A stretch of 64,000 bases of DNA, from sequence record MW879344.1, one strand, 5' to 3'. The notes below the pieces were generated by a model. The model did not search any database. It was given only the letters and a program-made list of their open reading frames with translations, and had not been told where the DNA came from. This document shows positions 1,614 through 57,510 of this stretch, one piece after another; positions within the stretch are counted from its first letter, which is position 1; every line of letters begins with the position of its first letter. The position numbers and the translations under genes were made by a program.

Positions 1614-1729
1614 GCAGTGATCGTCTAGAGGCTTAGGACACGAAAAAGCGATTCTTGGTTAAGAATCTTACGGCATCAATAAACTTTCATTTCACGAACG
1701 TAACGCAGGTTCGAATCCTGCTCACTGCA
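1614..1729 (+). tRNA. tRNA-Glu(TTC) interrupted by a 43-nt insert (1643-1685) in the anticodon stem
   Basis: Acceptor GCAGTGA/TCACTGC, T-arm GCAGG-TTCGAAT-CCTGC; removing 1643-1685 restores CG|TTC/GAACG stem around TTC (1691-1693). Confidence 0.8.
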
Positions 1730-1747
1730 CTAATATTGGAGTAATAT

Positions 1748-2050
1748 ATGAAAAGTATTCTTCTCTTTGAGTACTTCGCAACTGGCGAAGGTTGGCGTAC
1801 TGTAATCCGTTTCTATAATCAGAATCGTATTTCTGATGAGGCTGCACTGGAAACATTAAAATCAGAATTCGATCCATATTTTCATGTAGGATTTGAATTG
1901 CATGATATTAGTACTGTCAAGGATAACGCATCATTAATGCGTACTTTGAAAGAACATGTTCCAATTTTGTACAATTATGTTATGTTACCAGATGATGAAT
2001 ATCATCCAGTAATTAATGTAAAATATGAAGGTTATGTAAACTATTCATAA
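1748..2050 (+). CDS. hypothetical protein
   Basis: ORF with GGAG SD. Confidence 0.8.
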   Translation: MKSILLFEYFATGEGWRTVIRFYNQNRISDEAALETLKSEFDPYFHVGFELHDISTVKDNASLMRTLKEHVPILYNYVMLPDDEYHPVINVKYEGYVNYS

Positions 2051-2059
2051 AAGTAATTT

Positions 2060-2185
2060 GTGGGGTTAGCTCAGTCTGGTAGAGCAGCGAAAGAAAAAAC
2101 AATGGAATCTTGAAAAGGATTCTAACAGCATTATATCTTCTACTGTAAATTCGCAGGTCGGTGAGTTCGAATCCACCATCCCACA
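2060..2185 (+). tRNA. tRNA-Tyr(GTA)-like, short variable loop, interrupted by ~51-nt insert (~2092-2142)
   Basis: Acceptor GTGGGGT/ATCCCAC, D-stem GCTC/GAGC, GCGAA/TTCGC stem and CT-GTA-AA loop after removing insert. Confidence 0.75.
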
Positions 2186-2195
2186 CAAATTTGTC

Positions 2196-2224
2196 TTGAC
2201 ATGGTGTATCCTGTGTGTTATATT
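2196..2224 (+). promoter_or_regulatory. sigma70-type promoter
   Basis: TTGACA-N17-TATATT. Confidence 0.65.
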
Positions 2225-2258
2225 ACTATCATCAATTAAACGAGATAGGATTTAAATT

Positions 2259-2531
2259 ATGGACGGGATTGCAATGCGTATTCAAGTCTTACCGAATGGT
2301 TTGATTATTGGTCATGTTGTTCCAAAAGAACATCCAGCGAATCGCTGTTATAATTTGGAACCTAACCATGTATATGAACTTCAAATTGATCTTACTTATG
2401 GTAACGATAAATTGAAAAACATTGGCGAAGCTGATTTTAAAACTTCTGATGTTGATCCTCGTGGTTGTAGTATCGACCACTTGATTGCAGTAAGCAGTGG
2501 GCGTCATTTAACCGTGAATGATGGGAAATAA
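2259..2531 (+). CDS. hypothetical protein
   Basis: ORF downstream of promoter, AGGA SD. Confidence 0.75.
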   Translation: MDGIAMRIQVLPNGLIIGHVVPKEHPANRCYNLEPNHVYELQIDLTYGNDKLKNIGEADFKTSDVDPRGCSIDHLIAVSSGRHLTVNDGK

Positions 2532-2533
2532 AA

Positions 2534-2899
2534 ATGAAAGTATTCATTGATGATATTCGTGACCCAAAAAATTACTTGACACCAGAACAGGCTGATGGTA
2601 TTATTTGGATCAAAGAGTGGTGGTCAGCAAAACGCTTTTTGATTGATCATGCTGCTGAAATTGAAGTGATTCATTTTGACCATTACATGGATGAACCAAC
2701 GTTAACTGGTAAAGATTTATTCTTTATGGTTGCTGGGGATTGTATGTGGGGTGGAAAAGAAACATGGATTAAACTACAGAAAATTTATTTACATTCTTCT
2801 GATGTTGATATGGTTGAAGAACTTGTTGAAGAATATAGTACTGAATTGGCTGAAGCTGGTGTTGAGCTTATTGATAACCATCAAGAAAGGAACTACTAA
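2534..2899 (+). CDS. cyclic-phosphate processing receiver-like domain protein
   Basis: MKVFIDDIRDP...IHFDHY...GKD...IYLHSSD matches the LDDxRxP / DHD / HS pattern. Confidence 0.7.
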   Translation: MKVFIDDIRDPKNYLTPEQADGIIWIKEWWSAKRFLIDHAAEIEVIHFDHYMDEPTLTGKDLFFMVAGDCMWGGKETWIKLQKIYLHSSDVDMVEELVEEYSTELAEAGVELIDNHQERNY

Positions 2900-3256
2900 A
2901 TGAAAGTTTATGTAGATGATATTCGTAATCCACAAAACCATCTAAGTTCTGAACAGGCAGCCGATGTAGTATGGATTAAAGAATGGTGGGATGCACGTAA
3001 CTTTATCTTTTATAATAATTTAGAAATTGAAGTGATTCATTTAGATAATTATCTAGGTGACCGTACCCACACTGGGGCTGATTTACTTCAAATGATTACA
3101 TATAGGTTTCGCCGTGGGGAATTCCCTAAGTTGAAACAAATTTATCTTCACAGTTCTGATAAAGATATTGTGAATAAACTGTATGACAAACATATTGAAC
3201 GTTGTACAGAAGCTGGTGTTGAATTAATTAAAAATTCACGTCCAAACCGTAGTTAA
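2900..3256 (+). CDS. cyclic-phosphate processing receiver-like domain protein (tandem paralog)
   Basis: MKVYVDDIRNP...IHLDNYLG...GAD...IYLHSSD; clear paralog of 2534-2899. Confidence 0.7.
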   Translation: MKVYVDDIRNPQNHLSSEQAADVVWIKEWWDARNFIFYNNLEIEVIHLDNYLGDRTHTGADLLQMITYRFRRGEFPKLKQIYLHSSDKDIVNKLYDKHIERCTEAGVELIKNSRPNRS

Positions 3257-3262
3257 ACAAAT

Positions 3263-3384
3263 GGCGAGTTAGCTCAGTTGGTAGAGCAGGAAAAAAACCG
3301 ATTCTTGTATTGAATCGTACAGCAAACAATACTATTGCACTTTTAATGCCCTTGTCGGGGGTTCAATTCCCTCACTCGCCACCA
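3263..3384 (+). tRNA. tRNA-Lys(TTT) interrupted by a 46-nt insert (3291-3336) in the anticodon stem
   Basis: Acceptor GGCGAGT/ACTCGCC+ACCA; removing 3291-3336 gives GG|GCA-CT-TTT-AA-TGCCC. Confidence 0.85.
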
Positions 3385-7274: not shown

Positions 7275-7680
7275 AATTATTTGTGGATTTCCTGGTATAG
7301 GTAAGAGTAGTATTAAAAATATCGGCAAAGTACTTGATTTGGATAGTTCTTTGTATACCAAGAATTCTTTATTTCCTGCTAATTATATTGTTGATATTGT
7401 ATCTGCAATGGATGAATATGATTATATTTTGGTAAGTACGCATGACGTACTTAGAAAAGAATTACAATCAATGGGTATTAGTTATACTAATGTATATCCA
7501 GAGATTGATTTAGGTGAAGAATACCACGACCGTTATGTTCAACGCGGAAGTCCTGAAAGTTTTATTAATTTTATTGATGAAAATTGGGATGACTTCATAT
7601 ACGAATTGCAGTATGATGATTCTGAATATGTTGAACTGGAAAGCGGTCAATTTCTTTCAGATATTATAGCAAATATTTGA
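7267..7680 (+). CDS. small P-loop NTPase/kinase-like protein
   Basis: Walker A GFPGIGKSS; DLDSS. Confidence 0.75.
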   Translation: MAKIICGFPGIGKSSIKNIGKVLDLDSSLYTKNSLFPANYIVDIVSAMDEYDYILVSTHDVLRKELQSMGISYTNVYPEIDLGEEYHDRYVQRGSPESFINFIDENWDDFIYELQYDDSEYVELESGQFLSDIIANI

Positions 7681-7706
7681 AACGAAAGAAAAAATTGTGG
7701 TATAAT
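7678..7706 (+). promoter_or_regulatory. TGAAAC-N17-TATAAT promoter class
   Basis: Same pattern at 7862-7890, 13345-13373, 17383-17411, 26431-26459, 41636-41664. Confidence 0.7.
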
Positions 7707-7723
7707 ATAGTACATAAGGCAAC

Positions 7724-7840
7724 GGAATCTTACAGCAAAAATACTAATTTTTGATGAAAACGAAACGACGAGGTTCGAATCCTCACCCACGAATTGCCTT
7801 ATTATTAGTGGGAGCACGGTGCTGGATAAACAAAGATTCC
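7724..7840 (+). ncRNA. module-clamped, permuted tRNA-like RNA (degenerate)
   Basis: GGAATC-TTACAGCAA...GAGG-TTCGAAT-CCTC-ACCCAC...GTGGG...AAACAAA-GATTCC. Confidence 0.65.
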
Positions 7841-7861
7841 AGAATTTAAGTTAGAAAATTA

Positions 7862-7890
7862 TGAAACAAATCAAAAATTTGTGGTATAAT
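7862..7890 (+). promoter_or_regulatory. TGAAAC-N17-TATAAT promoter class
   Basis: TGAAAC 7862-7867, TGG-TATAAT ending 7890. Confidence 0.7.
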
Positions 7891-7902
7891 ATAAGAAGTA
7901 AA

Positions 7903-8010
7903 GCGGGATGGTGATTGATGAAAGCTATTATTTGATTCTAGAAAATCATAATAAGCGAGTAAGAGAACAGGGTTCTTAATATCACGAGGGTTCGATCCCC
8001 TGTCGCTGCA
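7903..8010 (+). ncRNA. tRNA-like RNA with elongated central arm
   Basis: T-arm AGGG-TTCGATC-CCCT, imperfect acceptor GCGGGAT/GTCGCTGC, long central hairpin. Confidence 0.45.
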
Positions 8011-8023
8011 CAAAGCAACAAAC

Positions 8024-8141
8024 GAAATCTCACAGCAAACAAAACAATTTTTTTCCTTGCATAGAAAAACGGTGGGGTTCGATTCCCCAACATCCAAGTT
8101 GCTTTTAGGATGTGTCTGGAAGGCCGTATGACAAAGATTTC
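8024..8141 (+). ncRNA. module-clamped, permuted tRNA-like RNA (degenerate)
   Basis: GAAATCT-CACAGCAA...TGGGG-TTCGATT-CCCCA-ACATCC...GGATGT...ACAA-AGATTTC. Confidence 0.65.
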
Positions 8142-8317
8142 AGTTCCTATCAACTAAAAAGGATAGCATATAATGAGTTCTGAAGAAAATTTAGAATTAT
8201 TAAATAAAATAATGAATGCCATTGCAAATGGTAAGTTGAATGAAACAATGACTGAACTTGGTTACGAAGTAACTAAGAGTACTGATAAAAGTACAGAATG
8301 GTCATTAAAACAATAAT

Positions 8318-8391
8318 GTTCTGTTAGACAAATTGGTAAAGTCACCACCCTTTCAAGGTGGGGTTTACGGGTTCGACCCCCGTACAGAACG
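8318..8391 (+). tRNA. tRNA-Glu(TTC), uninterrupted
   Basis: GTTCTGT/ACAGAAC, CCACC-CT-TTC-AA-GGTGG; no encoded CCA. Confidence 0.92.
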
Positions 8392-8396
8392 CTAAA

Positions 8397-8506
8397 GGAT
8401 TCGCACAGCAACAATAAAATCTTAAAATTCAATTGGTGAAAACAACCTTGCAGTTCGATTCTGCTTCCACAATGCGTGGATCTGGTCGATAGAAAAAACC
8501 GAATCC
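8397..8506 (+). ncRNA. module-clamped, permuted tRNA-like RNA (degenerate)
   Basis: GGATTCG-CACAGCAA...GCAG-TTCGATT-CTGC-TTCCAC...GTGGA...AAAAAAC-CGAATCC. Confidence 0.6.
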
Positions 8507-8545
8507 TGATTTTAATTAAGAAGTACTAAAGAATTTGATACACAC

Positions 8546-8698
8546 GGATTTATACAGCAAACATAATCCTAAAATAAAACATACGATAATGTTACTAACT
8601 CGGAATTCGTTCCCTTCGTTAGTACTTGGCAACTTGGGTACTTAAATAAGTTGTATCACCTCACGTGTATCGGATTAGAGGTGATTATAAATAAATCC
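8546..8698 (+). ncRNA. module-clamped multi-hairpin RNA
   Basis: GGATTTA-TACAGCAA...three hairpins...TAAATCC. Confidence 0.6.
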
Positions 8699-9243: not shown

Positions 9244-9300
9244 GGAATCTAGCAGCAACCATAACCCAATCAAACTTTTAATTTGACAATTATGGATTCC
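9244..9300 (+). ncRNA. module RNA carrying an isolated Lys(TTT)-type anticodon stem-loop
   Basis: GGAATC-TAGCAGCAA...TCAAA-CTTTTAA-TTTGA...GATTCC. Confidence 0.7.
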
Positions 9301-9478
9301 CGTTATTTTTAAGGATGTGATATGTCTAAAGAACAAGATGAATTTGAAAAAGAATATCTTATAAGTAAGCGTATTGATCCAAAAGCAACATTTTATATAA
9401 AATCTCGTAGAAAGAAAAATGGTTATAGAACTCGTGAATTGAATAATAAATTTCAAGAATTTCTTAAACGATTTAAAG

Positions 9479-9570
9479 GGTAAAGTGGCAGAGCGGCTGA
9501 ATGCAACCGCTTGGAAAGCGGTCAGGTTAGGTAATCCCTAGCCTCGTAGGTTCAAATCCTATCTTTACCG
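9479..9570 (+). tRNA. tRNA-Ser(GGA)
   Basis: GGTAAAG/CTTTACC, ACCGC-TT-GGA-AA-GCGGT, long variable arm, G73. Confidence 0.92.
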
Positions 9571-9622
9571 CAAAGTAATAACTCCTTATTAAAGTGAAGT
9601 ACAAAAACAATAGGAGAATATT

Positions 9623-9979
9623 ATGTACGAGAAAGATGATGGTCCATTAACTGATGAACAAATTCGTATCATCCGTGAAATGAATAGCCATCTGAATCAA
9701 ACTGATTTAGAAATTGATTTAAATTGGTTGAACAGTGATATACAAGGAAATGCAATGTATTACGACTATTATTACAAAGTTGACGGTGATCTTCGTCGTT
9801 ATACCAGTAATCAAGAGTTAACGGATGCGGAAATCAATAATATTTTTGGTGCAAGCAAACAAGTAGTAATGCTTACTCCAATTGTATTTGAACGTGACGT
9901 AACTACTGAAGACAAATCTGGTAAAAAGATTAAAAGTACTGAAAAAGTACATGTTGGCTTCTTAGGATATGTGGAATAA
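9623..9979 (+). CDS. hypothetical protein
   Basis: ORF with AGGAG SD. Confidence 0.75.
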   Translation: MYEKDDGPLTDEQIRIIREMNSHLNQTDLEIDLNWLNSDIQGNAMYYDYYYKVDGDLRRYTSNQELTDAEINNIFGASKQVVMLTPIVFERDVTTEDKSGKKIKSTEKVHVGFLGYVE

Positions 9980-9981
9980 AA

Positions 9982-10668
9982 ATGTCAAAAAAGACTGATA
10001 AAGAAGTAAAAGATACAAAAGAAAAGTACACTGTTGTTAAACACGGTTCACTAACACTAGTGAATACACCAACAGTAAAAACTTTCTATATGAATGGTTC
10101 TATTGATCATCCTACATTAACTAAGTTCCAAAAGTTCTTAGAAGATACATGTACGGAAAATAATAAAATTGATACCGAAGAAACTGAACGCAAAGAAAAG
10201 GATGAATTTAAAAAGATTCATGATCCTGAATCTAAGCCAGAGTTTGTTCCTGCTAAACGTAAAGTTGAGCGTATCAATCTGGTTATCAATAGTGGTGGTG
10301 GTTTAGTTGCAGTAATGCTAGAAGTTGTAGCACTAATGAAAACTTCACCAATTCCAATTGATACCTACTGTTTTGGTTCTGCAATGAGTGCAGCTTTCTT
10401 TATCTTCTTACATGGCAAACGCCGTTTTGTTGGTGAAGGTGCCTCATTTATGACACATAGCATTGGTGCTATGGCATGGGATAATGTACCAAACATGACA
10501 ATTCGTATGGAGTACTTGGTTAAACAAAACGAGTACGCACAACAGGAAATTGCTAAACGTACTGGAATTCCTCTTGAAAAATTAAAAGAGAAAGAACATC
10601 TCGATTGGTACTTGACTGCTGAAGAAGCGTTAGATGTTAAAATCGGTGAATATTTGATCCGAGATTAA
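9982..10668 (+). CDS. clpP: ClpP-family protease subunit
   Basis: INSGGG, GSAMSAA (catalytic Ser), FMTHS (catalytic His). Confidence 0.88.
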   Translation: MSKKTDKEVKDTKEKYTVVKHGSLTLVNTPTVKTFYMNGSIDHPTLTKFQKFLEDTCTENNKIDTEETERKEKDEFKKIHDPESKPEFVPAKRKVERINLVINSGGGLVAVMLEVVALMKTSPIPIDTYCFGSAMSAAFFIFLHGKRRFVGEGASFMTHSIGAMAWDNVPNMTIRMEYLVKQNEYAQQEIAKRTGIPLEKLKEKEHLDWYLTAEEALDVKIGEYLIRD

Positions 10669-10714
10669 ATATAAATTCTGGATTCGAAAGAATCCTTTTT
10701 TAAGTGAGATGATT

Positions 10715-10939
10715 ATGGACAATCAACACAAACATATTAAAGGGTATCGTGACCTTTCACAAAAAGAAGTGGATGCGATGAATGAGATTAAACAACTGGC
10801 TGCCATCGTTGGAGAGTTGATAGAAAAACTTGAAAGTACTGAATCAGTAGATAAACGTTGGCTTGCAATTGCAAAGACGGATTTACAAAAAGGATTCATG
10901 TCAGCAGTACGAAGTGTGGCTAAACCAGATTCCTTCTAA
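10715..10939 (+). CDS. acb2: anti-CBASS protein Acb2 (cyclic nucleotide sponge)
   Basis: MDNQHKHIKGYRDLS...RWLAIAKTDLQKGFM...PDSF closely matches the Acb2 family. Confidence 0.9.
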   Translation: MDNQHKHIKGYRDLSQKEVDAMNEIKQLAAIVGELIEKLESTESVDKRWLAIAKTDLQKGFMSAVRSVAKPDSF

Positions 10940-10948
10940 GGAACAAAG

Positions 10949-11329
10949 ATGTATACAACGGTTAATCATGCTGATATAATTGATGATATTATAACTGAAA
11001 TACTTGAAATTTATACATGTCGAGTTGAAATTTATAAAGATGGTCATTTATTCACTCAGTACGGGTATAATACTAAACATAATGTGAATTATCATATAAA
11101 TGTAAAGTACTATAATGATAATCCAAGTAATGGTGATAAAGCGAATAGCTTAATGGTAGAATTTAAATTTACCAATAGAGTTCCGAAGGGACTGAAAAAT
11201 CATTACAAGTTATCTATACCTGAAATAACAAGTCTTACAGAAGAACGGCATTTTCAATTAATGTTTGTCACTGATGATATGTATTTGGATTATGAAGTTA
11301 TAAATAAATTACGTACACATATTGTGTAA
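10949..11329 (+). CDS. hypothetical protein, EExxFQ paralog family
   Basis: C-terminal TEERHFQL motif. Confidence 0.75.
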   Translation: MYTTVNHADIIDDIITEILEIYTCRVEIYKDGHLFTQYGYNTKHNVNYHINVKYYNDNPSNGDKANSLMVEFKFTNRVPKGLKNHYKLSIPEITSLTEERHFQLMFVTDDMYLDYEVINKLRTHIV

Positions 11330-11341
11330 AAAAAAAGTTTT

Positions 11342-11393
11342 AGAATCTAACAGCAATCAAAACTCATTGGATATATGAAAAAAGATAGATTCT
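11342..11393 (+). ncRNA. minimal module RNA
   Basis: AGAATCT-AACAGCAA...TCAT-loop-ATGA-AAAAAGAT-AGATTCT. Confidence 0.65.
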
Positions 11394-11400
11394 AGTATTT

Positions 11401-11473
11401 GGGAATATAATTCAGTTGGTAGAATGCTCGACCGATAATCGAGTCGCCGCTGGTTCGAGTCCAGCTATTCCCA
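11401..11473 (+). tRNA. tRNA-Ile(GAT)
   Basis: GGGAATA/TATTCCC, CTCGA-CC-GAT-AA-TCGAG (C33). Confidence 0.9.
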
Positions 11474-11573
11474 CGAAGTAGTTCAGTACTGAAAAATGTA
11501 CAGTGAAATTATTCAACACTATAGGTAGCACTTTGAATGAATCAGTAAGCCTATAAGTAACTACAATAAATTT

Positions 11574-11700
11574 GGAATTCAACAGCAATTCACTTACTAA
11601 AAACAGCTACCTCACGGTTTGTAGGTTCAAGTCCTACCTTGTACTTTCGAGTACATGTGGTGAAAATGGTAAACACGGCTGTCCAAAAGAAATGAATTCC
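11574..11700 (+). tRNA. circularly permuted tRNA gene, Leu(TAA)-like
   Basis: 3' half 11596-11644, T-TTCG-A linker, 5' half 11651-11682; GCTGT/ACAGC anticodon stem; flanked by GGAATTC/GAATTCC. Confidence 0.75.
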
Positions 11701-11753
11701 AGTATTAATTAAGACATAAATATTCTTATACACTTTTTTGTAAGGATATAATT

Positions 11754-12353
11754 ATGGAAATGAAAAAGTTGATGGAAGATATTTCTGCCATCATGGAAGG
11801 ACAATTACCTGGTTATTATTATCATGGAAGTTCTGCCCCAATATCAAATTTTAGTGATGAGTTTGTTGGTAGAGGAAATGATGAATACGGTCCGGGAATA
11901 TATTTTAGTTCAGTTCCAAATACTTCTATAGGTTATGCAAAAGATGGCGGTTCTAATGGAATGGTATATCAGTGCGAAATCAATTTAAGAAAAGAACTAT
12001 CTAAAAAAACTAGAGTTAATAAAGCAGTACTATTAAAATTAATGCAAAATACACCTGATGAAGATGCATATACTAACTGGAATGAAAATAAAAATGTTGC
12101 TTATAGAACAGCATTACAGGGTTATGTAGATGAAGGTAATATGTATGATGCGTTAATGGGTGTTTGGTACGATTGGTATAGAGAATATCCTGTTCAATTC
12201 GTGCGTTCACTAGTACAGTTAGGATATGATGGATACATATATACTTTTGCAAGCGGTGAACGTTTTATTATAGTATATAATCCAGCAAGTATAAAAGTTG
12301 TAAACACATTCAATCCAGAAGAAGCTATGCAGAAACTGATTGGAAGTGAATAA
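11754..12353 (+). CDS. ADP-ribosyltransferase-fold protein (ART-PolyVal-like), possibly virion-packaged
   Basis: YYHGS, GPGIYFS, YA, late E motifs; ATAAATA at 11716-11722. Confidence 0.6.
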   Translation: MEMKKLMEDISAIMEGQLPGYYYHGSSAPISNFSDEFVGRGNDEYGPGIYFSSVPNTSIGYAKDGGSNGMVYQCEINLRKELSKKTRVNKAVLLKLMQNTPDEDAYTNWNENKNVAYRTALQGYVDEGNMYDALMGVWYDWYREYPVQFVRSLVQLGYDGYIYTFASGERFIIVYNPASIKVVNTFNPEEAMQKLIGSE

Positions 12354-12361
12354 TAAGATTT

Positions 12362-12479
12362 GGAATTCAACAGCAAATCATTCTAAACCCGTAGCATGTC
12401 GTAGGTTCAAGTCCTACCAGTACTTTCGAGTACTGTAGCTCAGTTGGTAGAGCAGCCACCTTAAAAAGAAATGAATTCC
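12362..12479 (+). tRNA. circularly permuted tRNA-like gene, anticodon unresolved
   Basis: T-arm and CAGTACT, TTCG, AGTACTG and D-arm GCTC/GAGC; flanked by GGAATTC/GAATTCC. Confidence 0.7.
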
Positions 12480-12511
12480 AGTATTAATTAAAACAACATG
12501 AGTATAAATCA

Positions 12512-12961
12512 ATGTCTGATAAGCATCAATTTAAAGTAAACATCGGTGATTGGTCACAAGATGGTCATAATCAATATGATGTTTTAGTTCTTAACAGTAC
12601 TAAACCAGTAGATGAAGTACAAAAAGCATTTAAAAAAGCTGCAACTGATTTACATTTACTAGTAAATGGTCGTTTTCTAATTGCAGATGAATTTGAAGAT
12701 TGTAGTCTATCTGAAGACCATGCAGAAGTTCTTAAAAATGCAGGTGTAAAATTTGATGATTTAGTGTATAATGATGGCGATGATGAAGAACCAAATTATA
12801 TTATTGAAGGTTCAAGTGATATGACTATCCTTGTGATGCGGATCGCCCAACTTGAATTGGACTTTGAATTTGAAATTACGAATGATGCAATTCCGAACTT
12901 TAACGGGTTCTGGACAGAAGAACAAATGCCATCAATCGGATATGGTTTGTATAACATATAA
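12512..12961 (+). CDS. hypothetical acidic protein
   Basis: ORF. Confidence 0.8.
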   Translation: MSDKHQFKVNIGDWSQDGHNQYDVLVLNSTKPVDEVQKAFKKAATDLHLLVNGRFLIADEFEDCSLSEDHAEVLKNAGVKFDDLVYNDGDDEEPNYIIEGSSDMTILVMRIAQLELDFEFEITNDAIPNFNGFWTEEQMPSIGYGLYNI

Positions 12962-12971
12962 AACAAGTTTT

Positions 12972-13034
12972 GGAATCTAGCAGCACCCATAAAATGAAAT
13001 CAACTGTTAATTGAAAAATTCAAAAATGGATTCC
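12972..13034 (+). ncRNA. module RNA carrying an isolated Asn(GTT)-type anticodon stem-loop
   Basis: GGAATC-TAGCAGCA...TCAA-CTGTTAA-TTGA...GATTCC. Confidence 0.7.
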
Positions 13035-13054
13035 AGCCTATTTCGGAGTAAAAA

Positions 13055-13324
13055 ATGTATTATGCTCGATTAGAATATCCAAACAATGGATATGAGATTG
13101 AAAGAATACGTCTTAAAGCCTTAGATCGCAAAAAGTACTACCCAGTAGTTTCGATTGATATTGGTAGTTCAAGTACTCGCATATATCTTGAAGGTGATAA
13201 GAATGCATATAATAGTGTGAACTTTGAATTCTATACCAAACATGGTGATGAATATATTCTTGAAGATATTTTCGAAGACCCTGATTTAAATCCGTACTTG
13301 GATGATGATGATGAAGAATATTAA
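13055..13324 (+). CDS. hypothetical protein
   Basis: ORF with GGAG SD. Confidence 0.8.
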   Translation: MYYARLEYPNNGYEIERIRLKALDRKKYYPVVSIDIGSSSTRIYLEGDKNAYNSVNFEFYTKHGDEYILEDIFEDPDLNPYLDDDDEEY

Positions 13325-13392
13325 ATAAAAATACCACAAATAAATGAAACGCTTCAAAAAATTGTGGTATAATATAAGTAAGTTAAACAAGA

Positions 13393-13464
13393 GGTTATGT
13401 CGTATAAAGGTTATTACGGAGAGCTGTTAACTCTTTTATCTTGGTTCGATTCCAAGCATGACCG
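13393..13464 (+). tRNA. tRNA-Asn(GTT)
   Basis: GGTTATG/CATGACC, GAGAG-CT-GTT-AA-CTCTT. Confidence 0.9.
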
Positions 13465-13581
13465 CAAAAAGTTAAATTCACCAGGCGTACTATGGTGGGA
13501 AAGGTATCATGATACCAATTCGAATAGAATACGTATTAAACCCTTGAACGGTTTTCTGTAAACTCAATTTAACAAATAATT

Positions 13582-13636
13582 AAGAATCTAACAGCAATCA
13601 AAACTCATTCGATTATATGAAAAAAGATAGATTCTT
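13582..13636 (+). ncRNA. minimal module RNA
   Basis: Near-copy of 11342-11393. Confidence 0.65.
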
Positions 13637-13641
13637 GTTTT

Positions 13642-13714
13642 AGGAGTATGGTGTAATTGGTTAGCACACGTGACTTTGACTCACGTAGTTGAGGTTCGAG
13701 TCCTTATATTCCTG
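13642..13714 (+). tRNA. tRNA-Gln(TTG)
   Basis: AGGAGTA/TATTCCT, CGTGA-CT-TTG-AC-TCACG. Confidence 0.9.
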
Positions 13715-13865
13715 CAAATTAAAATTTCATTCATTTCCTTGTGTGAAACAAGCTGGTATGATTCCCCTTGCTTGTAAAATTATCGAACGGGAACCGCGTT
13801 GCACCTGTACAGGTCAGATTGTAAAGATCGAGTATGTACAGTACTGAGAGCGGCAGTACAATAAA

Positions 13866-13947
13866 GCGGGATTAGCTCAGTGGTAGAGCACTTGCCTTCC
13901 AAGCAAGAGGCGAATAGGTTCCATCGGTTCGAATCCGATATTCCGCT
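13866..13947 (+). tRNA. tRNA-Gly(TCC) with enlarged variable region
   Basis: GCGGGAT/ATTCCGC, U73, CTTGC-CT-TCC-AA-GCAAG, ~15-nt variable region. Confidence 0.85.
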
Positions 13948-14065
13948 CAAACTAAACAAACAATAAGGTGATTTTTATGCTATAGAATCCTAGTACTGGT
14001 CCTCCTAAAGAATTTAATTCTGATATAAACAACTCAAAATTAAACTACTATAGGAAGAACATACC

Positions 14066-14392
14066 ATGTTAAACAAAGAACAATATATTACTGTAAAAAA
14101 TACTTGGAAAGCTGTAAAAGAACATAACATTTTTGATCATGTGATCTATAATGTACTTCGTGGAGTCCCATCTGATACTGGTTTCGCACCAATTACAGAC
14201 AGGGGTCGTTTACACGCTAACAACAATGACCCGTTCAATATGTACAATTACGCAGTTCGTGAAATTCATTATGAATTAAACGAAAAACGGTACAATTACG
14301 AAAAGACAGTAAAGCATTATTCTGAACTATTCGGCATTGAATTTACAAAAGAACTCATCGAAGAAATTGTTTCTTTGATTAAAGTTAAATAA
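14066..14392 (+). CDS. hypothetical protein
   Basis: ORF with AGGA SD. Confidence 0.8.
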   Translation: MLNKEQYITVKNTWKAVKEHNIFDHVIYNVLRGVPSDTGFAPITDRGRLHANNNDPFNMYNYAVREIHYELNEKRYNYEKTVKHYSELFGIEFTKELIEEIVSLIKVK

Positions 14393-14400
14393 CAGAATTA

Positions 14401-14457
14401 AAGAATCCAGCAGCAACTAAAACTCATTCGCTTAATATGAAAAAGAAACGGATTCTT
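14401..14457 (+). ncRNA. minimal module RNA
   Basis: AAGAATCC-AGCAGCAA...TCAT-loop-ATGA...GGATTCTT. Confidence 0.65.
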
Positions 14458-14477
14458 GTTTTTATTTGGAAAACGAT

Positions 14478-38127: not shown

Positions 38128-39120
38128 GTGAGCATCAAAAAGCTAAACTTAGATGAAATTCAGGATGAGATTCTAGATGAGTGTTTTAACAGTGAAGATA
38201 AAACACTTGACTCGTTAGTTGTCGATGAAGATGATTTCGAAGTAGAAAGTACCGAAGAAGTTATCGATACTGGTCTAACTATGGATAAGATTAAATCCAA
38301 AGTAAAAACAGAGCAGTACATCAGTAATGAAGTTTTAGTTCGTAATGTACAGAATAATATTGATGTTGAACGTTCAAAAGAACTTCTAATCATGTTCAAC
38401 AGTGGCTTAGTGTATAACGAAGCAAAGAACTGTACTTGTAACATTCCGTTCCAAGATAAAGTACAATACGGTTTTGAAGGATTAATGAAAGCTATCTATG
38501 GTTTCAATACAAACTTCAAAACAATGTTCAGTACTTATGCAACTACCGCGATCCGTCAACATATGTACCGAAACGGAAACAACGATGTGCGTATGGTAGC
38601 GTTACCAGAGCATCTATCAATGCACAATATCCGCATCCAGAGCTTCATTGAGAAGACCATGCAGGACAGTACTGGCTACCCTACGCACGAACAGATCTCA
38701 GAGGGTACGGGCATTGACATTCGTTCAGTGAAGCGTATAATGAACTACAACAGCAACACATTCAGCATCGACACCCCAATGAATCGCGGTGGGGATGAAG
38801 GGTCACAACAGACTCTAAAAGATATGATTCCTGGTGAAAGTGGGGATTACATCGTAGATGAACGTTGTGTAAGTAAAGACTTCCTAAGCACAATGGAAGA
38901 TATTATGAATGAACTAGAAGAACATGAACGTGTATTGTTAGGTTTAGTTCATGGTTTAGATGGTTATCGTATTCATACATTTGATGAAATTATTAGTACT
39001 GGATATATCGACAGTACTGGTAAGTATGTTTCATCTAAAGCAACATTATCTCGCCGTTATAGTGCTGTGATGGATAAAGTACGCCGCATTGTTGAACGTA
39101 AACAAATCAGTTTTGACTAA
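38128..39120 (+). CDS. sigma70-family RNA polymerase sigma factor
   Basis: Region 2 NSGLV..EAK, GLMKAI..F..FSTYATTAIR; region 3 PTHEQI, SIDTP; region 4-like LEEHER...TFDEI. Confidence 0.85.
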   Translation: MSIKKLNLDEIQDEILDECFNSEDKTLDSLVVDEDDFEVESTEEVIDTGLTMDKIKSKVKTEQYISNEVLVRNVQNNIDVERSKELLIMFNSGLVYNEAKNCTCNIPFQDKVQYGFEGLMKAIYGFNTNFKTMFSTYATTAIRQHMYRNGNNDVRMVALPEHLSMHNIRIQSFIEKTMQDSTGYPTHEQISEGTGIDIRSVKRIMNYNSNTFSIDTPMNRGGDEGSQQTLKDMIPGESGDYIVDERCVSKDFLSTMEDIMNELEEHERVLLGLVHGLDGYRIHTFDEIISTGYIDSTGKYVSSKATLSRRYSAVMDKVRRIVERKQISFD

Positions 39121-54240: not shown

Positions 54241-54266
54241 AAAAAGCCCCAATAAGGGGCTTTTTT
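54241..54266. terminator. bidirectional intrinsic terminator
   Basis: AAAAAGCCCC-AATAA-GGGGCTTTTTT between convergent genes. Confidence 0.85.
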
Positions 54267-55401
54267 ATGATAATGAAGGAGTAACTAATGGTTGGAAACC
54301 AATAACTACCTTACTACTTCCATAATTTGGAAGTAATGAATAATTGCCACTATTACCACAACCATATATTTTAAAATCGGTTATAAAATATGTAGTACCT
54401 GTACCGAAATGAATAATATCTTTGAGTTGGGATATTATAGCAGGATCAGTACCAGGAACTTGTGTAAATGAAGACATATAATTATTCCAAGGTGCAGCAA
54501 TAGTATTTGCTCCACCAATTGGATATGTCGAAGTTTGATAACCACTGAAATAAAGATTATTATCTGTACCAATTATGTGAGTACAACTTTGATAACTATG
54601 TATTGATTTTATAGTTGACAAATTAAATGGAAGTACTATCCAGTCGGTAACACCAGAAGTTAAACCATTACCTAGTTGACCATTAGAATTTTGTCCTTGT
54701 ACATACCACGTACCATCACTTTTCTTTACAAATAATGCACCATACATTACGTATACATCAACAACATCTGTGTTTAATGTTATAAATGATGGATTAGTCG
54801 ATGGATTAGCTGAACCTAATAAATTTGTTCCATTATATCCAGAACCAACTATTGTACCATCATTTTTTAATACAAATAAGTTATCAATAATATCATCTTT
54901 TGTGAATATATCTTTCACATTAGTCAATGGTAGTTTAATAAAAGATTGACTTGTTGTAGTAGTTCCATTTCCATATGAACCATATCCATTTCCACCAACT
55001 GCCCAAACTTCACCAACAGTATTCAAAACAAATATAGAACTAGAACTTACACACATTTTTTTAACAATACCAAATGAGTTAAAACTTGAGCTAACATTGC
55101 TCCAAGGTACGGTTGTACGTATTCCAAATGGATTTGATGATCCGCTCCACCAGTAAGTACCATCATTCTTGAGTACAAATGACCAACTAGTATTACTCCA
55201 TACATCTTTAACATCTGAAATTGTTTTTACAAATCCAGTAAATGGTACACCTAAACCTAACCTAGAATCATCACCCATTCCATATAACGAATTTGTTGAA
55301 TCCTGAGAAAGTAGCCCTAAACTAATTCTACTAGTAACAAACTTTTTATAGAATCTTTTTTCGCGTATTGTAGTATTACTTATTATTGGGAAAGGTAACA
55401 T
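54265..55401 (-). CDS. MLPFP-family, RCC1-like beta-propeller protein
   Basis: VWAVGGNGYGSYG, GQNSNGQLG repeats. Confidence 0.8.
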   Translation of the reverse strand: MLPFPIISNTTIREKRFYKKFVTSRISLGLLSQDSTNSLYGMGDDSRLGLGVPFTGFVKTISDVKDVWSNTSWSFVLKNDGTYWWSGSSNPFGIRTTVPWSNVSSSFNSFGIVKKMCVSSSSIFVLNTVGEVWAVGGNGYGSYGNGTTTTSQSFIKLPLTNVKDIFTKDDIIDNLFVLKNDGTIVGSGYNGTNLLGSANPSTNPSFITLNTDVVDVYVMYGALFVKKSDGTWYVQGQNSNGQLGNGLTSGVTDWIVLPFNLSTIKSIHSYQSCTHIIGTDNNLYFSGYQTSTYPIGGANTIAAPWNNYMSSFTQVPGTDPAIISQLKDIIHFGTGTTYFITDFKIYGCGNSGNYSLLPNYGSSKVVIGFQPLVTPSLS

Positions 55402-55412
55402 ATATATTCCTC

Positions 55413-56255
55413 TTATTGATTATTTGTTAATTGATTAGGGAATGATCTACCTGCACCCCATATAACTCGTACTCCACCTTGGCATGTAGTAGAATTTGAA
55501 CCCCCTGCACCACGATAGTTAGTACTTCCCATATTTGAAGAACCAGCAGCACCTTCATTTCCCCGACCTCCACCAGTACCATTGTTACCTTGACCATACA
55601 TAGCAGTTCCACCACCTGAACCACCATATGACTGTGAACCTAGACCAGAACCGCCACCGCCGCCAGCACCACCAGCACCAGTTCCTCCTGATCCTCCTGA
55701 ATATACACCACCATTTCCTCCTGAACCAGAATATCCTCCAGCACCACCGGAACCACCTCTGCCGTTTCCATATTGTCCAGCACCACCGGAACCACCATTA
55801 GCACCCCCATCATTTATAGTACTTGCAGATTTACCACCTGTACCACCTGTACCTGCATATGGTGTTGTACCACCCGTACCACCATTCGCTATAACTAATG
55901 TATCAGTATTTCTTCTAATTGCACTTAATGTTCCACCGCCCCCAGTACTACCTATTGAATTAACTGGTGCACCTCTAGAACCAACAATTATTGTTAAGGT
56001 TTCGCCTGGAGTTACAGGAATATTATTTCTAAAACTTAGTCCACCGCCTCCGCCTCCGCCACCAGCAGGATATGAACCTGATCCACTAGGTGGACCATAA
56101 TATGTATTTGAACCACCACCACCACCGATAACAACTGCACTGATAGAATAAACATCATGAGGTACTGTAAAATTAAATGTTCCAGTACTAATCCATTCTT
56201 GTTGACCTTTAGGTGGAAGTTTGTTAGTATTACTTATTATTGGAAATGGTAACAT
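55413..56255 (-). CDS. MLPFP-family, glycine-rich fibre-type protein
   Basis: FTVP..VYSISAVVIGGGGG...GGVRVIWG. Confidence 0.8.
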   Translation of the reverse strand: MLPFPIISNTNKLPPKGQQEWISTGTFNFTVPHDVYSISAVVIGGGGGSNTYYGPPSGSGSYPAGGGGGGGGLSFRNNIPVTPGETLTIIVGSRGAPVNSIGSTGGGGTLSAIRRNTDTLVIANGGTGGTTPYAGTGGTGGKSASTINDGGANGGSGGAGQYGNGRGGSGGAGGYSGSGGNGGVYSGGSGGTGAGGAGGGGGSGLGSQSYGGSGGGTAMYGQGNNGTGGGRGNEGAAGSSNMGSTNYRGAGGSNSTTCQGGVRVIWGAGRSFPNQLTNNQ

Positions 56256-56269
56256 TTTTTTCTCCTTAA

Positions 56270-57507: not shown

Positions 57508-57510
57508 AAT

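What the first reader, a model, noticed from the sequence alone, without database searches (positions are those of the whole stretch)
12362..12479. Second permuted tRNA whose acceptor stem is sealed directly by TTCG
Seen: CAGTACT-TTCG-AGTACTG leaves no discriminator base or CCA site. D and T arms are canonical, the anticodon stem GCCAC/GTAGC has one mismatch, and the anticodon cannot be resolved. Inference: unlikely to be chargeable, so it may be an exonuclease-proof L-shaped decoy.
Basis: partly seen in the sequence, partly recalled or inferred. Interest (0 to 1): 0.85.

Follow-up and report, generated by a model that had tools for sequence, protein, structure and literature searches.

The report
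Phage tRNA-shaped Y-RNA-like gene
The flagged stretch is a real, conserved gene for a circularly permuted, tRNA-shaped non-coding RNA. Its conserved stem handle links it to a Ro60-like protein of large phages, so it is most likely a phage counterpart of bacterial "Y RNAs", not a chargeable tRNA.

Summary
Window 12360-12481 (+) encodes a permuted tRNA body: T arm, a 7-bp acceptor stem closed by TTCG, a D arm, and a 5-bp anticodon-stem equivalent with one C·A mismatch. This body sits on a 10-bp closing helix followed by an invariant CAGCAA.

The fold is kept by compensatory changes in five phage genera. It recurs in unrelated phage contigs, where 23 of 30 pairs covary. No anticodon can be rebuilt consistently across orthologues, so it is not a decoding tRNA.

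Its topology is that of the tRNA-like domain of bacterial YrlA Y RNAs (Rfam YrlA 40.5 bits, below the cut-off of 69). It lacks the YrlA Ro-site motif.

The window's own phage, Erwinia phage pEa_SNUABM_49, encodes a Ro60-fold protein (DUF2828). That gene lies about 204 kb from the RNA.

In 80 other phage loci, the helix+CAGCAA handle piles up in the 1 kb just upstream of this protein's gene, on the same strand (p≈3e-44).

Best reading: a Y-RNA-like partner of a phage Ro-like RNP. Binding and function are inferred, not shown.

The same handle also interrupts tRNA-Lys and tRNA-Glu genes and forms short intergenic hairpins. This is unexplained.

The parts
12360..12369 (+). P1, 5' strand of the closing helix (UUGGAAUUCA)
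   Evidence: Pairs with 12472-12481. It is 100% paired in five orthologues with one compensatory C-G to U-A change. Across the family the pair types are AU:19/GC:19, CG:26/UA:11 and UA:17/CG:14.
12370..12376 (+). A-CAGCAA, the invariant single-stranded motif directly 3' of P1 and the family signature
   Evidence: Invariant in alignments A3 and A4. The motif search gave 12 or 16 matches against about 2.3 or 2.8 expected. The same motif sits next to Ro-like genes in other phages.
12377..12390 (+). Variable linker (AUCAUUCUAAACCC) between the motif and the anticodon-stem equivalent
   Evidence: It differs among orthologues and holds no conserved anticodon-loop sequence.
12391..12395 (+). P2, 3' strand of the anticodon-stem equivalent (GUAGC)
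   Evidence: Pairs with 12455-12459. Two of the four counted pairs show compensatory changes, and the C·A mismatch is kept in all five orthologues.
12396..12400 (+). Variable loop (AUGUC), with C in position to pair with G15 (Levitt pair)
   Evidence: Read from the sequence. Identical in all five P3 orthologues.
12401..12417 (+). T arm (GUAGG-UUCAAGU-CCUAC)
   Evidence: Matched by the Rfam YrlA and tRNA models. Compensatory U-A to C-G change.
12418..12435 (+). Closed acceptor-like stem (CAGUACU-UUCG-AGUACUG)
   Evidence: Read from the sequence. The loop varies among orthologues. All 7 pairs covary across distant family members.
12436..12454 (+). UA (positions 8-9), D arm (GCUC-AGUUGGUA-GAGC) and A26
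   Evidence: Matched by the Rfam YrlA and tRNA models. Fully conserved in orthologues.
12455..12459 (+). P2, 5' strand of the anticodon-stem equivalent (GCCAC)
   Evidence: Partner of 12391-12395.
12460..12471 (+). A-rich linker (CUUAAAAAGAAA) leading into P1
   Evidence: An A-rich strand is found before the 3' strand of P1 in most family members.
12472..12481 (+). P1, 3' strand of the closing helix (UGAAUUCCAG)
   Evidence: Partner of 12360-12369.
12482..12492 (+). Conserved 3' tail (UAUUAAUUAAA)
   Evidence: Identical after the first permuted copy. Conserved in orthologues.
11572..11702 (+). Sister element: the first permuted tRNA-like RNA, with a class-II-like body (long variable arm), the same P1/CAGCAA handle and the same TTCG cap
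   Evidence: Sequence. R1 covariance model 84.3 bits. Orthologues in Yen9-03, CBB, GAP32, Kaldavass and XbC2.
7722..8507 (+). Three further permuted tRNA-like elements with the same handle (about 7722-7842, 8023-8142, 8396-8507)
   Evidence: Sequences. P1 partners located by script. An extended -10 promoter lies at 7677-7706.
9244..14458 (+). Short handle-only hairpins (about 55-80 nt) scattered across this span, at about 9244-9300, 11341-11395, 12971-13046, 13582-13637 and 14402-14458
   Evidence: R1 hits at 11336-11406, 13577-13648 and 14396-14469, all on the gene strand. The copies at about 9244-9300 and 12971-13046 rest on motif and sequence only.
1614..3384 (+). Normal-order tRNA genes carrying the same handle as a 45-55 nt insert in the anticodon stem (1614-1729 Glu-UUC, 2060-2185, 3263-3384 Lys-UUU)

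Best explanation
Window 12360-12481 is a gene for a stable non-coding RNA of the Y-RNA kind. It belongs to a jumbo phage (Erwinia phage pEa_SNUABM_49, genus Eneladusvirus).

The RNA's 5' and 3' ends pair into a 10-bp helix (P1). P1 is followed by an unpaired CAGCAA, and together they form a conserved handle. The rest of the RNA folds into a circularly permuted tRNA body. That body has an anticodon-stem equivalent, a variable loop, a T arm, an acceptor stem closed by a loop, and a D arm. It has the tRNA L-shape but no anticodon and no CCA end.

Proposed mechanism, by analogy with Ro60/Y-RNA particles: the handle is bound by the phage's Ro60-fold protein (DUF2828 + vWA-like domain; MW879344.1 101383-102906). 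The tRNA-shaped domain then presents a tRNA look-alike to tRNA-recognising factors. These could be phage RNA-repair enzymes encoded in the same genome (an ATP RNA ligase next to the Ro-like gene, RlaP, the CCA-adding enzyme, Pnkp/Rnl1). They could also be host tRNA-targeting nucleases, with the RNA tethering or gating the Ro-like ring during the contest over tRNAs.

Shown: the fold, its conservation and covariation, the family, the Ro60 fold of the protein, and the genomic linkage of handle and protein gene in other phages.

Inferred: transcription, binding, and what the particle does.
For: (1) The structure is real and selected. RNAfold gives z = -3.6. Five orthologues are 99.3% paired, with compensatory changes in P1, P2 and the T stem. 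Ten members from unrelated phages are 95.9% paired, with 23 of 30 pairs compensated and all 7 acceptor pairs covarying.

(2) The topology is that of the YrlA tRNA-like domain. The Rfam YrlA model aligns to T arm, closed stem and D arm inside a short enclosing stem (40.5 bits, E = 2e-7). Chen et al. 2014 (PMC4201824) describe exactly this order.

(3) It is modular like Y RNA families. One handle carries different apical domains: five tRNA-like bodies and at least five short hairpins in this window. There are 43 covariance-model hits at E < 0.01 across nine sources (the window and eight loci), all on the gene strand.

(4) The same genome encodes a Ro60-fold protein. Pfam matches DUF2828 and DUF7788. 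The AlphaFold2 model has pLDDT 90. The top 11 Foldseek PDB hits are all Ro60, Rsr or phage phiLo Ro60, full length, E = 1.7e-10, TM 0.6. The protein is present in MW879344.1 and in every handle-bearing phage examined.

(5) Handle and protein gene are linked across phages. In 80 loci around DUF2828 genes, strict handle matches number 164 on the gene strand, 35 on the opposite strand and 20 in shuffled sequence. Of the 164, 77 fall in the 1 kb directly upstream of the gene, which is 7% of the sequence (p = 3e-44). 47 of 76 loci have one there. tRNA genes do not explain this.

(6) Full permuted tRNA-like members lie beside Ro-like genes in unrelated contigs. tRNA-likes carrying the handle lie beside the gene in Cronobacter phage S13 and Aeromonas phage 4_4572.

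(7) It is not a decoder: no consistent anticodon loop can be rebuilt across orthologues (sequence inspection).
Against: - In this phage the RNA lies about 204 kb from the Ro-like gene. Published YrlA RNAs lie within 4 kb of theirs.
- It lacks the GNCGAAN0-1G/CGAA Ro-site motif and falls below the Rfam YrlA gathering score.
- The protein does not match Pfam TROVE by sequence. It matches Ro60 only by fold.
- Only P3 hits the YrlA model, not the other permuted copies.
- No expression or binding data exist.
- The handle upstream of Ro-like genes lies a median of about 70 nt from the start codon, so it could be a cis-acting leader rather than a free RNA.
- In Eneladusvirus the handle precedes many unrelated genes and tRNAs. 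It also sits inside tRNA-Lys and tRNA-Glu genes, which a pure Y-RNA model does not explain.
- DUF2828 proteins occur in 709 phage records. I examined flanks in only 83 loci (3 picked phage loci plus the 80 best viral contigs matches), and Vibrio phage nt-1 showed nothing within 2.5 kb.
Confidence: 0.6

Rival explanations
1. Processing or splicing signal. The helix+CAGCAA module is a cleavage-and-ligation signal, a small protein-dependent intron. It would play the role that the bulge-helix-bulge motif plays for archaeal and algal intron-containing, split and permuted tRNAs. In tRNA-Lys and tRNA-Glu genes it would be cut out and the exons sealed by Pnkp/Rnl1 or the second ligase. In the permuted form (this finding) the same cuts would release a tRNA-shaped body whose ends are then joined into a covalently closed circle, or left nicked. 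This reading is compatible with the Ro-like ring serving as the platform.
For: - The identical module interrupts the 5' strand of the anticodon stem (position 28/29 or 29/30) of otherwise intact tRNA-Lys(UUU) and tRNA-Glu(UUC) genes in four lineages. These tRNAs cannot decode unless the insert is removed.
- The permuted and short forms are exact circular permutations of that arrangement.
- By my reading of the sequences, the distance from P1 to the 3' junction is nearly constant at 18-20 nt.
- The phage encodes T4-type Pnkp and Rnl1, a second ATP RNA ligase, RlaP and a CCA-adding enzyme.
- Lak megaphages also have unexplained tRNA introns (PMC6784885).
Against: - No endonuclease candidate was identified.
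- No bulge-helix-bulge-like symmetry or conserved helix appears at the junctions (inspection).
- Handle-only hairpins in many intergenic gaps, and directly upstream of Ro-like genes, have no exons to join.
- No ribozyme family matches.
- There are no RNA data.
Confidence: 0.2
2. Cis-acting intergenic element. The helix+CAGCAA hairpins would be mRNA leaders, stabilisers, weak terminators or processing sites of the early/tRNA operons. In other phages they would be an autoregulatory leader of the Ro-like gene. The tRNA-shaped cargo of this copy would then be an evolutionary passenger.
For: - All copies are co-oriented with the genes. They fill intergenic gaps and end 5-30 nt before a ribosome-binding site or a tRNA 5' end.
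- The 3' strand of P1 is followed by U-rich tails.
- A genuine terminator at 10680-10695 uses the same GGATTC/GAATCC stem.
- In other phages the handle ends a median of about 70 nt before the Ro-like start codon.
Against: - The tRNA body is under its own strong structural selection. This includes the closed acceptor stem, in phages that share little else. That is hard to square with a passenger.
- P1 is AU-rich and encloses 55-330 nt, unlike an intrinsic terminator.
- The sigma-70 and terminator scans are at chance level for this region.
Confidence: 0.12
3. Permuted gene for a real, chargeable tRNA. As in Cyanidioschyzon merolae, the ends would be joined at the anticodon side, and RNase P plus 3' processing would open the acceptor loop.
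For: - The 3' half precedes the 5' half.
- There is a 7-bp acceptor stem plus a 5-bp T stem. In M. smegmatis YrlA a 7-bp acceptor-like stem is cut by RNase P and receives CCA (PMC4201824).
- The phage has a CCA-adding enzyme.
- In CBB the acceptor loop holds 35-170 nt, like a spacer.
Against: - No 7-nt anticodon loop can be rebuilt consistently. Orthologues would give different anticodons.
- There is no discriminator/trailer arrangement. The loop is 4 nt here and effectively CUAG in Kaldavass and XbC2.
- The C·A mismatch in the anticodon stem is conserved.
- The body is not a close copy of any tRNA in the window.
Confidence: 0.04
4. Non-functional debris left by recombination between tandem intron-bearing tRNA genes.
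For: Reading across two adjacent insert-bearing tRNA genes would produce exactly this order. The region also holds several degenerate tRNA-like sequences.
Against: Conservation at 83-100% identity in five genera, with compensatory changes in four helices. The same architecture appears in unrelated phages.
Confidence: 0.02

Closest known systems
YrlA-type bacterial Y RNAs (Rfam RF02553; Chen et al. 2014, PMC4201824; structure preprint 10.1101/312249)
   Same: - A stem formed by the RNA's two ends carries a protein handle.
- The apical domain is a tRNA mimic in the same permuted order: short enclosing stem, variable region, T arm, closed acceptor-like stem, D arm.
- The conserved tRNA tertiary-pair positions are kept.
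- Smaller siblings lacking the tRNA-like domain exist, like YrlB.
- A Ro60-fold protein is encoded in the same genome.
- YrlA-like RNAs were already reported in 22 phages.
   Different: - The handle is a helix plus CAGCAA, not GNCGAAN0-1G.
- It scores 40.5 bits against the gathering score of 69.
- The partner candidate is a DUF2828-type protein that matches Ro60 by fold but not Pfam TROVE by sequence.
- In this phage the RNA is about 204 kb from the protein gene and is multiplied within the tRNA cluster.
- The same handle also occurs inside tRNA genes.
Thermus phage phiLo Ro60 with Yrl1/Yrl2 (PMC12135203)
   Same: A phage-encoded Ro60-fold ring with phage-encoded Y-like RNAs. Its structure (9KOP) is among the top fold matches of the protein found here.
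   Different: Yrl1 and Yrl2 were picked by a CGAA motif just upstream of the gene and are stem-bulge-stem RNAs. No permuted tRNA body and no CAGCAA handle are described.
Permuted, split and intron-containing tRNA genes of archaea and Cyanidioschyzon merolae (bulge-helix-bulge system; reviewed in PMC4090602)
   Same: One junction motif is seen in three gene topologies: inside tRNAs, flanking a permuted tRNA body, and on its own. In the permuted form the 3' half lies upstream of the 5' half.
   Different: There is no bulge-helix-bulge motif, no splicing endonuclease is known in these phages, and no functional anticodon loop can be restored.
Enigmatic tRNA introns of Lak megaphages (PMC6784885)
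   Same: Phage tRNA genes interrupted by short, highly conserved inserts with no known splicing mechanism.
   Different: A different phage group and host. I did not compare the sequences.
Circularly permuted (two-piece) tmRNA genes (from my own knowledge)
   Same: A bacterial precedent for a permuted tRNA-like gene.
   Different: ARAGORN finds no tmRNA here. There is no tag reading frame and no free acceptor end.

Membership tests
YrlA / bacterial Y RNA | tRNA-like domain in the order T arm, closed acceptor-like stem, D arm, enclosed by a stem, with tRNA tertiary-pair positions kept | tested here: met
   Rfam YrlA alignment over model positions 24-84. RNAfold. Covariation. U8/A14, G15/C48, G18-G19 and the UUC of the T loop are present in the sequence.
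YrlA / bacterial Y RNA | Reaches the Rfam RF02553 gathering score (69 bits) | tested here: not met
   40.5 bits. Only the tRNA-like core aligns, and the flanks (model positions 1-23 and 85-114) do not.
YrlA / bacterial Y RNA | GNCGAAN0-1G (CGAA) motif near the 5' end, the presumed Ro60 site | tested here: not met
   The 5' region reads UUGGAAUUCA-ACAGCAAAUC. The motif definition comes from PMC4201824 and PMC12135203.
YrlA / bacterial Y RNA | Encoded within about 4 kb of a Ro60 orthologue on the same strand | tested here: not met
   - No ORF longer than 230 aa lies within 4 kb.
- No TROVE or DUF2828 match among the 8 largest ORFs of the 64-kb window.
- The Ro-like gene lies at MW879344.1 101383-102906, while the RNA is at about 306.4 kb.
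- For relatives of the family in other phages the criterion is met.
YrlA / bacterial Y RNA | A Ro60 (ring of HEAT-like repeats plus vWA domain) protein encoded by the same genome | tested here: met
   The match is at fold level: AlphaFold2 pLDDT 90, and the top 11 Foldseek PDB hits are Ro60, Rsr or phiLo Ro60. By sequence it is DUF2828 + DUF7788, not TROVE.
YrlA / bacterial Y RNA | RNA is physically bound by the Ro60 protein | not testable with these tools
   Needs pull-down or gel shift. Only genomic linkage of handle and gene is available (p = 3e-44).
Canonical tRNA (Rfam RF00005 / ARAGORN) | Cloverleaf in normal order with a 7-nt anticodon loop and a free acceptor end | tested here: not met
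   ARAGORN makes no call here. RF00005 scores 24.6 bits, below 29.
Permuted tRNA gene (C. merolae / archaeal type) | 3' half upstream of the 5' half of one tRNA | tested here: met
   Sequence order. The acceptor halves are complementary.
Permuted tRNA gene (C. merolae / archaeal type) | Bulge-helix-bulge motif formed by leader and trailer at the anticodon-side junction | tested here: not met
   By inspection the junction is a 10-bp helix with asymmetric unpaired strands of 21 nt and 12 nt. I ran no formal bulge-helix-bulge search.
Permuted tRNA gene (C. merolae / archaeal type) | Joining the ends restores a functional anticodon loop that is conserved among orthologues | tested here: not met
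   The possible loops differ among orthologues.
Permuted (two-piece) tmRNA | tRNA-Ala-like acceptor with a free CCA end plus a tag reading frame | tested here: not met
   ARAGORN reports no tmRNA in the window.

The most novel reading that the evidence does not exclude
The helix+CAGCAA module may be the recognition signal of a previously unknown phage RNA cut-and-rejoin system. This system would be built around the Ro60-like ring and its neighbouring RNA ligase.
- It would splice the module out of phage tRNA-Lys and tRNA-Glu precursors.
- From permuted genes like this one, it would produce covalently closed, tRNA-shaped circular RNAs that no exonuclease or acceptor-end-directed toxin can attack.
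- It would be a bacterial-virus analogue of the archaeal bulge-helix-bulge world.
Probability: 0.15. Interest if true: 0.92.

Novelty: new variant of a known kind. Interest (0 to 1): 0.7.

Why it matters
Y RNAs that mimic tRNA are known from bacteria and a few phages. Their function and the reason for the tRNA mimicry remain open.

This analysis points to a large, unannotated phage RNA family with a new handle motif. The family is tied by genome context to DUF2828 proteins, which are Ro60-fold proteins present in at least 709 sequenced phages (T4-like, Rak2-like, mycobacteriophages, Listeria and Staphylococcus phages and others). That gives a testable RNA partner for a very common phage 'hypothetical protein'.

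It would also place Ro-type particles in the phage-host contest over tRNAs, alongside phage tRNA sets, RNA ligases, Pnkp and anti-defence genes.

The same handle sits inside tRNA-Lys and tRNA-Glu genes, whose tRNAs are the classic targets of anticodon nucleases. These genes offer a direct experimental route to the question of what Ro/Y RNPs do with tRNAs.

Tried and rejected
- Decoding tRNA: rejected. ARAGORN and RF00005 fail, and no consistent anticodon exists.
- Sigma-54 or sigma-70 promoter reading of TTGGAAT..CAGCA: rejected. The GG-to-GC spacing is one base short for sigma-54. Promoter scans are at chance level. P1 shows RNA-type covariation including G·U pairs.
- Known self-cleaving ribozymes or other Rfam families: no match in E-value mode over about 7.4 kb of the window.
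- Mobile element with inverted ends: by inspection of the flanks there is no target-site duplication. All copies are co-oriented with transcription.
- Module present in bacterial genomes: the genome-contig scan gave only scattered single hits in unrelated taxa, as chance would give.
- Y RNA right beside the Ro-like gene in phage BF: none found with the R1 model or Rfam.
- Closest tRNA paralogue of the body: none stands out, with 51 of about 65 positions at best.
- Literature on permuted tRNAs or this motif in phages: nothing found. Burroughs & Aravind 2016 (PMC5062991) could not be read. From memory, it predicted Rot/TROVE modules with Y RNAs in RNA-repair systems.
- My first, loose module detector (6-bp stem) was too permissive, with 165 hits in shuffled sequence. 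I replaced it with the strict one.
- One literature search was wasted on a bad term setting.
- I did not scan BF genome positions from about 150 kb to about 294 kb, where this window begins.
Full report
**1. What is in the sequence**

The window is the last 64 kb of the record of Erwinia phage pEa_SNUABM_49 (MW879344.1, 358 kb, Eneladusvirus BF). Window position equals record position minus 294049. It covers the early/tRNA region, where ARAGORN finds 21 tRNAs.

At 12360-12481 on the + strand the sequence reads as follows:
- UUGGAAUUCA, the 5' strand of helix P1
- A-CAGCAA
- a 14-nt linker
- GUAGC
- AUGUC
- GUAGG-UUCAAGU-CCUAC, the T arm
- CAGUACU-UUCG-AGUACUG, the closed acceptor stem
- UA
- GCUC-AGUUGGUA-GAGC, the D arm
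- A
- GCCAC
- CUUAAAAAGAAA
- UGAAUUCCAG, the 3' strand of P1
- UAUUAAUUAAA

RNAfold recovers P1 and the T, acceptor and D hairpins without guidance (-31 kcal/mol, z = -3.6). ARAGORN makes no call here. Rfam tRNA is sub-threshold (24.6 bits). The best Rfam match is the bacterial Y RNA family YrlA, at 40.5 bits against a gathering score of 69 (E = 2e-7 for the 801 bases scanned). Only its tRNA-like core, model positions 24-84, aligns.

**2. It is a conserved, selected RNA structure**

The element is unannotated in every record. It is conserved at 83-100% identity in Serratia phage BF, the pEa_SNUABM phages, Yersinia phages fHe-Yen9-03 and -04, Cronobacter phage GAP32, Erwinia phage Kaldavass and Xanthomonas phage XbC2. 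Pectobacterium phage CBB holds altered copies.

In five orthologues 99.3% of pair cells are standard pairs. Four pairs (in P1, P2 and the T stem) carry compensatory double changes. Slid controls give 18-43%. The C·A mismatch is kept in all five.

The TTCG loop is not conserved. Yen9-03 has UAAUUG. Kaldavass and XbC2 effectively have CUAG. The CBB copies carry about 35 and 170 nt there. What is selected is a closed acceptor stem, not the tetraloop.

No anticodon loop can be rebuilt. The bases flanking the stem would give UAA, AUA or AAA, or alternatively AAC, UCC or AUC, in different orthologues. It is not a decoding tRNA. It is also not a recent copy of any tRNA in the window.

**3. It belongs to a multi-copy family defined by a handle**

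P1 plus CAGCAA recurs far above chance: 12 matches against 2.3 expected, and 16 against 2.8. It appears in three topologies.

(a) Permuted tRNA-like elements:
- the 'first' one at 11572-11702, with a class-II-like body and the same TTCG cap
- three more at about 7722-7842, 8023-8142 and 8396-8507

(b) Handle-only hairpins of 55-80 nt in intergenic gaps:
- at about 9244, 11341, 12971, 13582 and 14402
- two of them end 5-6 nt before tRNA-Ile and tRNA-Gln

(c) A 45-55 nt insert inside normal-order tRNA genes:
- at 1614-1729 (Glu-UUC), 2060-2185 and 3263-3384 (Lys-UUU)
- always arranged as 5' exon, A-rich strand, P1 hairpin, (N)CAGCA, 3' exon
- located in the 5' strand of the anticodon stem
- conserved in GAP32, Kaldavass and XbC2, with P1 covarying as GATTC/GAATC, GGATTC/GAATCC and AAATTAC/GTAATTT

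Forms (a) and (b) are exact circular permutations of (c).

A covariance model built from the five orthologues (R1) finds 43 elements at E < 0.01 across nine sources (the window and eight loci). All are on the gene strand. P1 covariation across the family is strong, with pair types AU:19/GC:19, CG:26/UA:11 and UA:17/CG:14. That alignment is model-fitted.

Pattern scans place multi-copy occurrences only in 355-378 kb jumbo-phage contigs. A bacterial genome scan gave only scattered single hits in unrelated taxa, as chance would give.

**4. Comparison with Y RNAs, and the search for Ro60**

Chen et al. 2014 (PMC4201824) define YrlA RNAs by four features:
- a 5'/3' stem carrying a GNCGAAN0-1G motif
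- T, acceptor-like and D stem-loops in this same permuted order
- location within 4 kb of a Ro60 gene on the same strand
- existence of smaller siblings such as YrlB

Here the tRNA-like core and the modular family structure fit. The motif is different (ACAGCAA). No large ORF lies nearby. The eight largest ORFs of the window are a sigma-70-like factor, five RCC1-like repeat proteins and two ORFs without a significant family match. None matches TROVE or DUF2828.

I then scanned the BF genome up to 150 kb. It holds a 508-aa 'RNA-binding protein' at 101477-103003, next to an ATP-dependent RNA ligase. Pfam assigns it DUF2828 + DUF7788, not TROVE.

An AlphaFold2 model built from 27 homologues is confident (pLDDT 90, pTM 0.88). 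Its top 11 PDB matches are all Ro60 proteins: Xenopus and human Ro60, D. radiodurans Rsr, and Thermus phage phiLo Ro60. They align over the full length, with E down to 1.7e-10 and TM about 0.6.

The same protein is encoded by the window's own genome at 101383-102906 (99.8% identity). It is also encoded by every handle-bearing phage examined, and by 709 phage records in all, including 95 mycobacteriophages.

The genome also carries RlaP, a CCA-adding enzyme, T4-type Rnl1 and Pnkp, and per the literature a Thg1-like enzyme, TyrRS and a peptidyl-tRNA hydrolase.

No Y-like RNA lies directly beside the Ro-like gene in BF.

**5. The handle is genomically tied to the Ro-like gene in other phages**

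In Cronobacter phage S13 (T4-like), two tRNA-like genes lie 0.5 kb downstream of the Ro-like gene. Each has an A-rich strand, a hairpin and UAUU-CAGCA in place of the anticodon loop.

In Aeromonas phage 4_4572, a tRNA-like gene has its anticodon loop replaced by AGCAAAAACA-GGAGUC-UGAGA-GAUUCC-UUA-CAGCAA. Two handle-only hairpins also precede the Ro-like gene. All lie on its strand. Vibrio phage nt-1 shows nothing within 2.5 kb.

I then fetched 80 loci around DUF2828 genes from IMG/VR. I scored them with a strict detector: an 8-bp helix with at most one G·U pair, 0-3 nt, CAGCAA, and the partner strand 15-330 nt downstream.

The results:
- 164 hits on the gene strand, 35 on the opposite strand and 20 in shuffled sequence.
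- 77 of the 164 lie in the 1 kb directly upstream of the gene, which is 7% of the sequence (binomial p = 3e-44).
- 47 of 76 eligible loci have at least one there.
- The consensus ends are UUUUAGGAUnnnUnCAGCAA ... AUCCUGUU.

tRNA genes do not explain the peak. That bin holds only 16 tRNAs, and 14 of 31 tRNA-free loci still carry the handle.

R1 also finds complete permuted tRNA-like members on the Ro-gene strand in unrelated contigs:
- L326 (76.6 bits), L351 (75) and L314 (66).
- L347 (59).
- L328 (46), 344 nt upstream of the gene.
- L287.

Ten such members are 95.9% paired. 23 of 30 pairs are compensated, and all seven acceptor-stem pairs covary (model-fitted alignment).

**6. Interpretation**

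The best-supported reading is that this is a Y-RNA-like gene. It combines a handle (P1 + CAGCAA) for a phage Ro60-fold protein with a permuted tRNA-shaped domain. That makes it an analogue of YrlA with a different handle and a divergent Ro.

By analogy with Ro60/Y RNA particles (PMC4201824, PMC12135203), the handle would dock on the ring. The tRNA-shaped domain would tether or gate it toward tRNA-recognising partners. The genomic company suggests tRNA repair or quality control in the phage-host conflict:
- RNA ligases, RlaP, a CCA-adding enzyme and Pnkp
- a large phage tRNA set
- nearby anti-defence genes, namely Acb2/Tad1-like at 10709-10939 and an ART-PolyVal ADP-ribosyltransferase at 11754-12353

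Shown here:
- the fold, its selection and the family
- the Ro60 fold of the protein
- the genomic linkage of handle and protein gene

Inferred, not shown:
- transcription and ends
- physical binding
- function

Weak points:
- the 204-kb separation in this phage
- the absence of the canonical motif
- the possibility that upstream copies act in cis
- the unexplained presence of the handle inside tRNA-Lys and tRNA-Glu genes

That last observation keeps alive a more novel reading, in which the module is a cut-and-rejoin (intron or circularisation) signal. I rate it at about 0.15-0.2.

A chargeable permuted tRNA and recombination debris are both effectively excluded.

**7. Novelty and verdict**

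tRNA-mimicking Y RNAs, including some in phages, are known. So this is a new variant of a known kind, not a new category.

What appears new, within the literature I could search:
- the CAGCAA handle family
- its link to the very widespread DUF2828 proteins
- its three topologies, including inserts in tRNA genes
- its amplification in the tRNA region of Rak2-like jumbo phages

I could not read Burroughs & Aravind 2016, which may anticipate part of this.

'Exonuclease-proof decoy' is unproven, and a Ro-type RNP component is the better frame.

Noticed in passing
window 1614-1729, 2060-2185, 3263-3384 (also L004:3964-4090, L005:3713-3829 and 11781-11902, L006:4263-4377 and 11660-11781): Otherwise intact tRNA-Glu(UUC) and tRNA-Lys(UUU) genes carry a 45-55 nt insert (A-rich strand, hairpin, CAGCA) in the 5' strand of the anticodon stem. 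The insert is conserved across four phage lineages. GenBank annotates these genes as oversized tRNA-Phe(aaa), tRNA-Lys or tRNA-OTHER.
   Followed up: partly
window 11754-12353 (+): A 199-aa ADP-ribosyltransferase (Pfam ART-PolyVal, E = 2e-11, with a weak PARP match) lies exactly between the two permuted tRNA-like RNAs. The same arrangement holds in CBB and GAP32, but not in Kaldavass or XbC2.
   Followed up: partly
window 9982-10668 and 10709-10939 (+): A ClpP-like protease gene is followed by a 76-aa Acb2/Tad1-hairpin protein, a likely anti-CBASS/Thoeris nucleotide sponge. This marks the region as anti-defence territory.
   Followed up: no
window 7677-7706, 7861-7890, 13344-13373 (+): Three near-identical strong promoters with an extended -10 (TGGTATAAT) sit directly upstream of a permuted tRNA-like element, a degenerate insert-bearing tRNA-like sequence, and tRNA-Asn.
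   Followed up: no
window 8547-8693 (+): An element with the same P1/CAGCAA handle (GGATTTAT ... ATAAATCC) carries a 120-nt non-tRNA cargo.
   Followed up: no
window 54265-63682 (-): Five paralogous 360-387 aa proteins with RCC1-like beta-propeller repeats lie in a row on the minus strand.
   Followed up: no
window 38128-39120 (+): A phage-encoded sigma-70-family factor (regions 2 and 3 detected).
   Followed up: no
L002:2659-2815 and L002:4043-4315 (Pectobacterium phage CBB): Orthologous permuted elements carry about 35 nt and about 170 nt inside the acceptor-stem loop. That loop therefore tolerates, or hosts, extra RNA.
   Followed up: no
window 10680-10695 (+): An intrinsic terminator after the ClpP-like gene uses the P1 sequence itself: GGATTC-GAAA-GAATCC followed by T6.
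   Followed up: no
L274:7227-7673 (Serratia phage BF 57227-57673): A gene annotated 'RNA ligase' matches Pfam Acb1 (an anti-CBASS 2H phosphodiesterase), not an RNA ligase.
   Followed up: no
L287:7679-7810 and L328:7523-7657 (uncultured phage contigs): Permuted tRNA-like RNAs with the UAGGAU.../CAGCAA handle lie 190-350 nt upstream of DUF2828 genes in phages unrelated to the window.
   Followed up: partly
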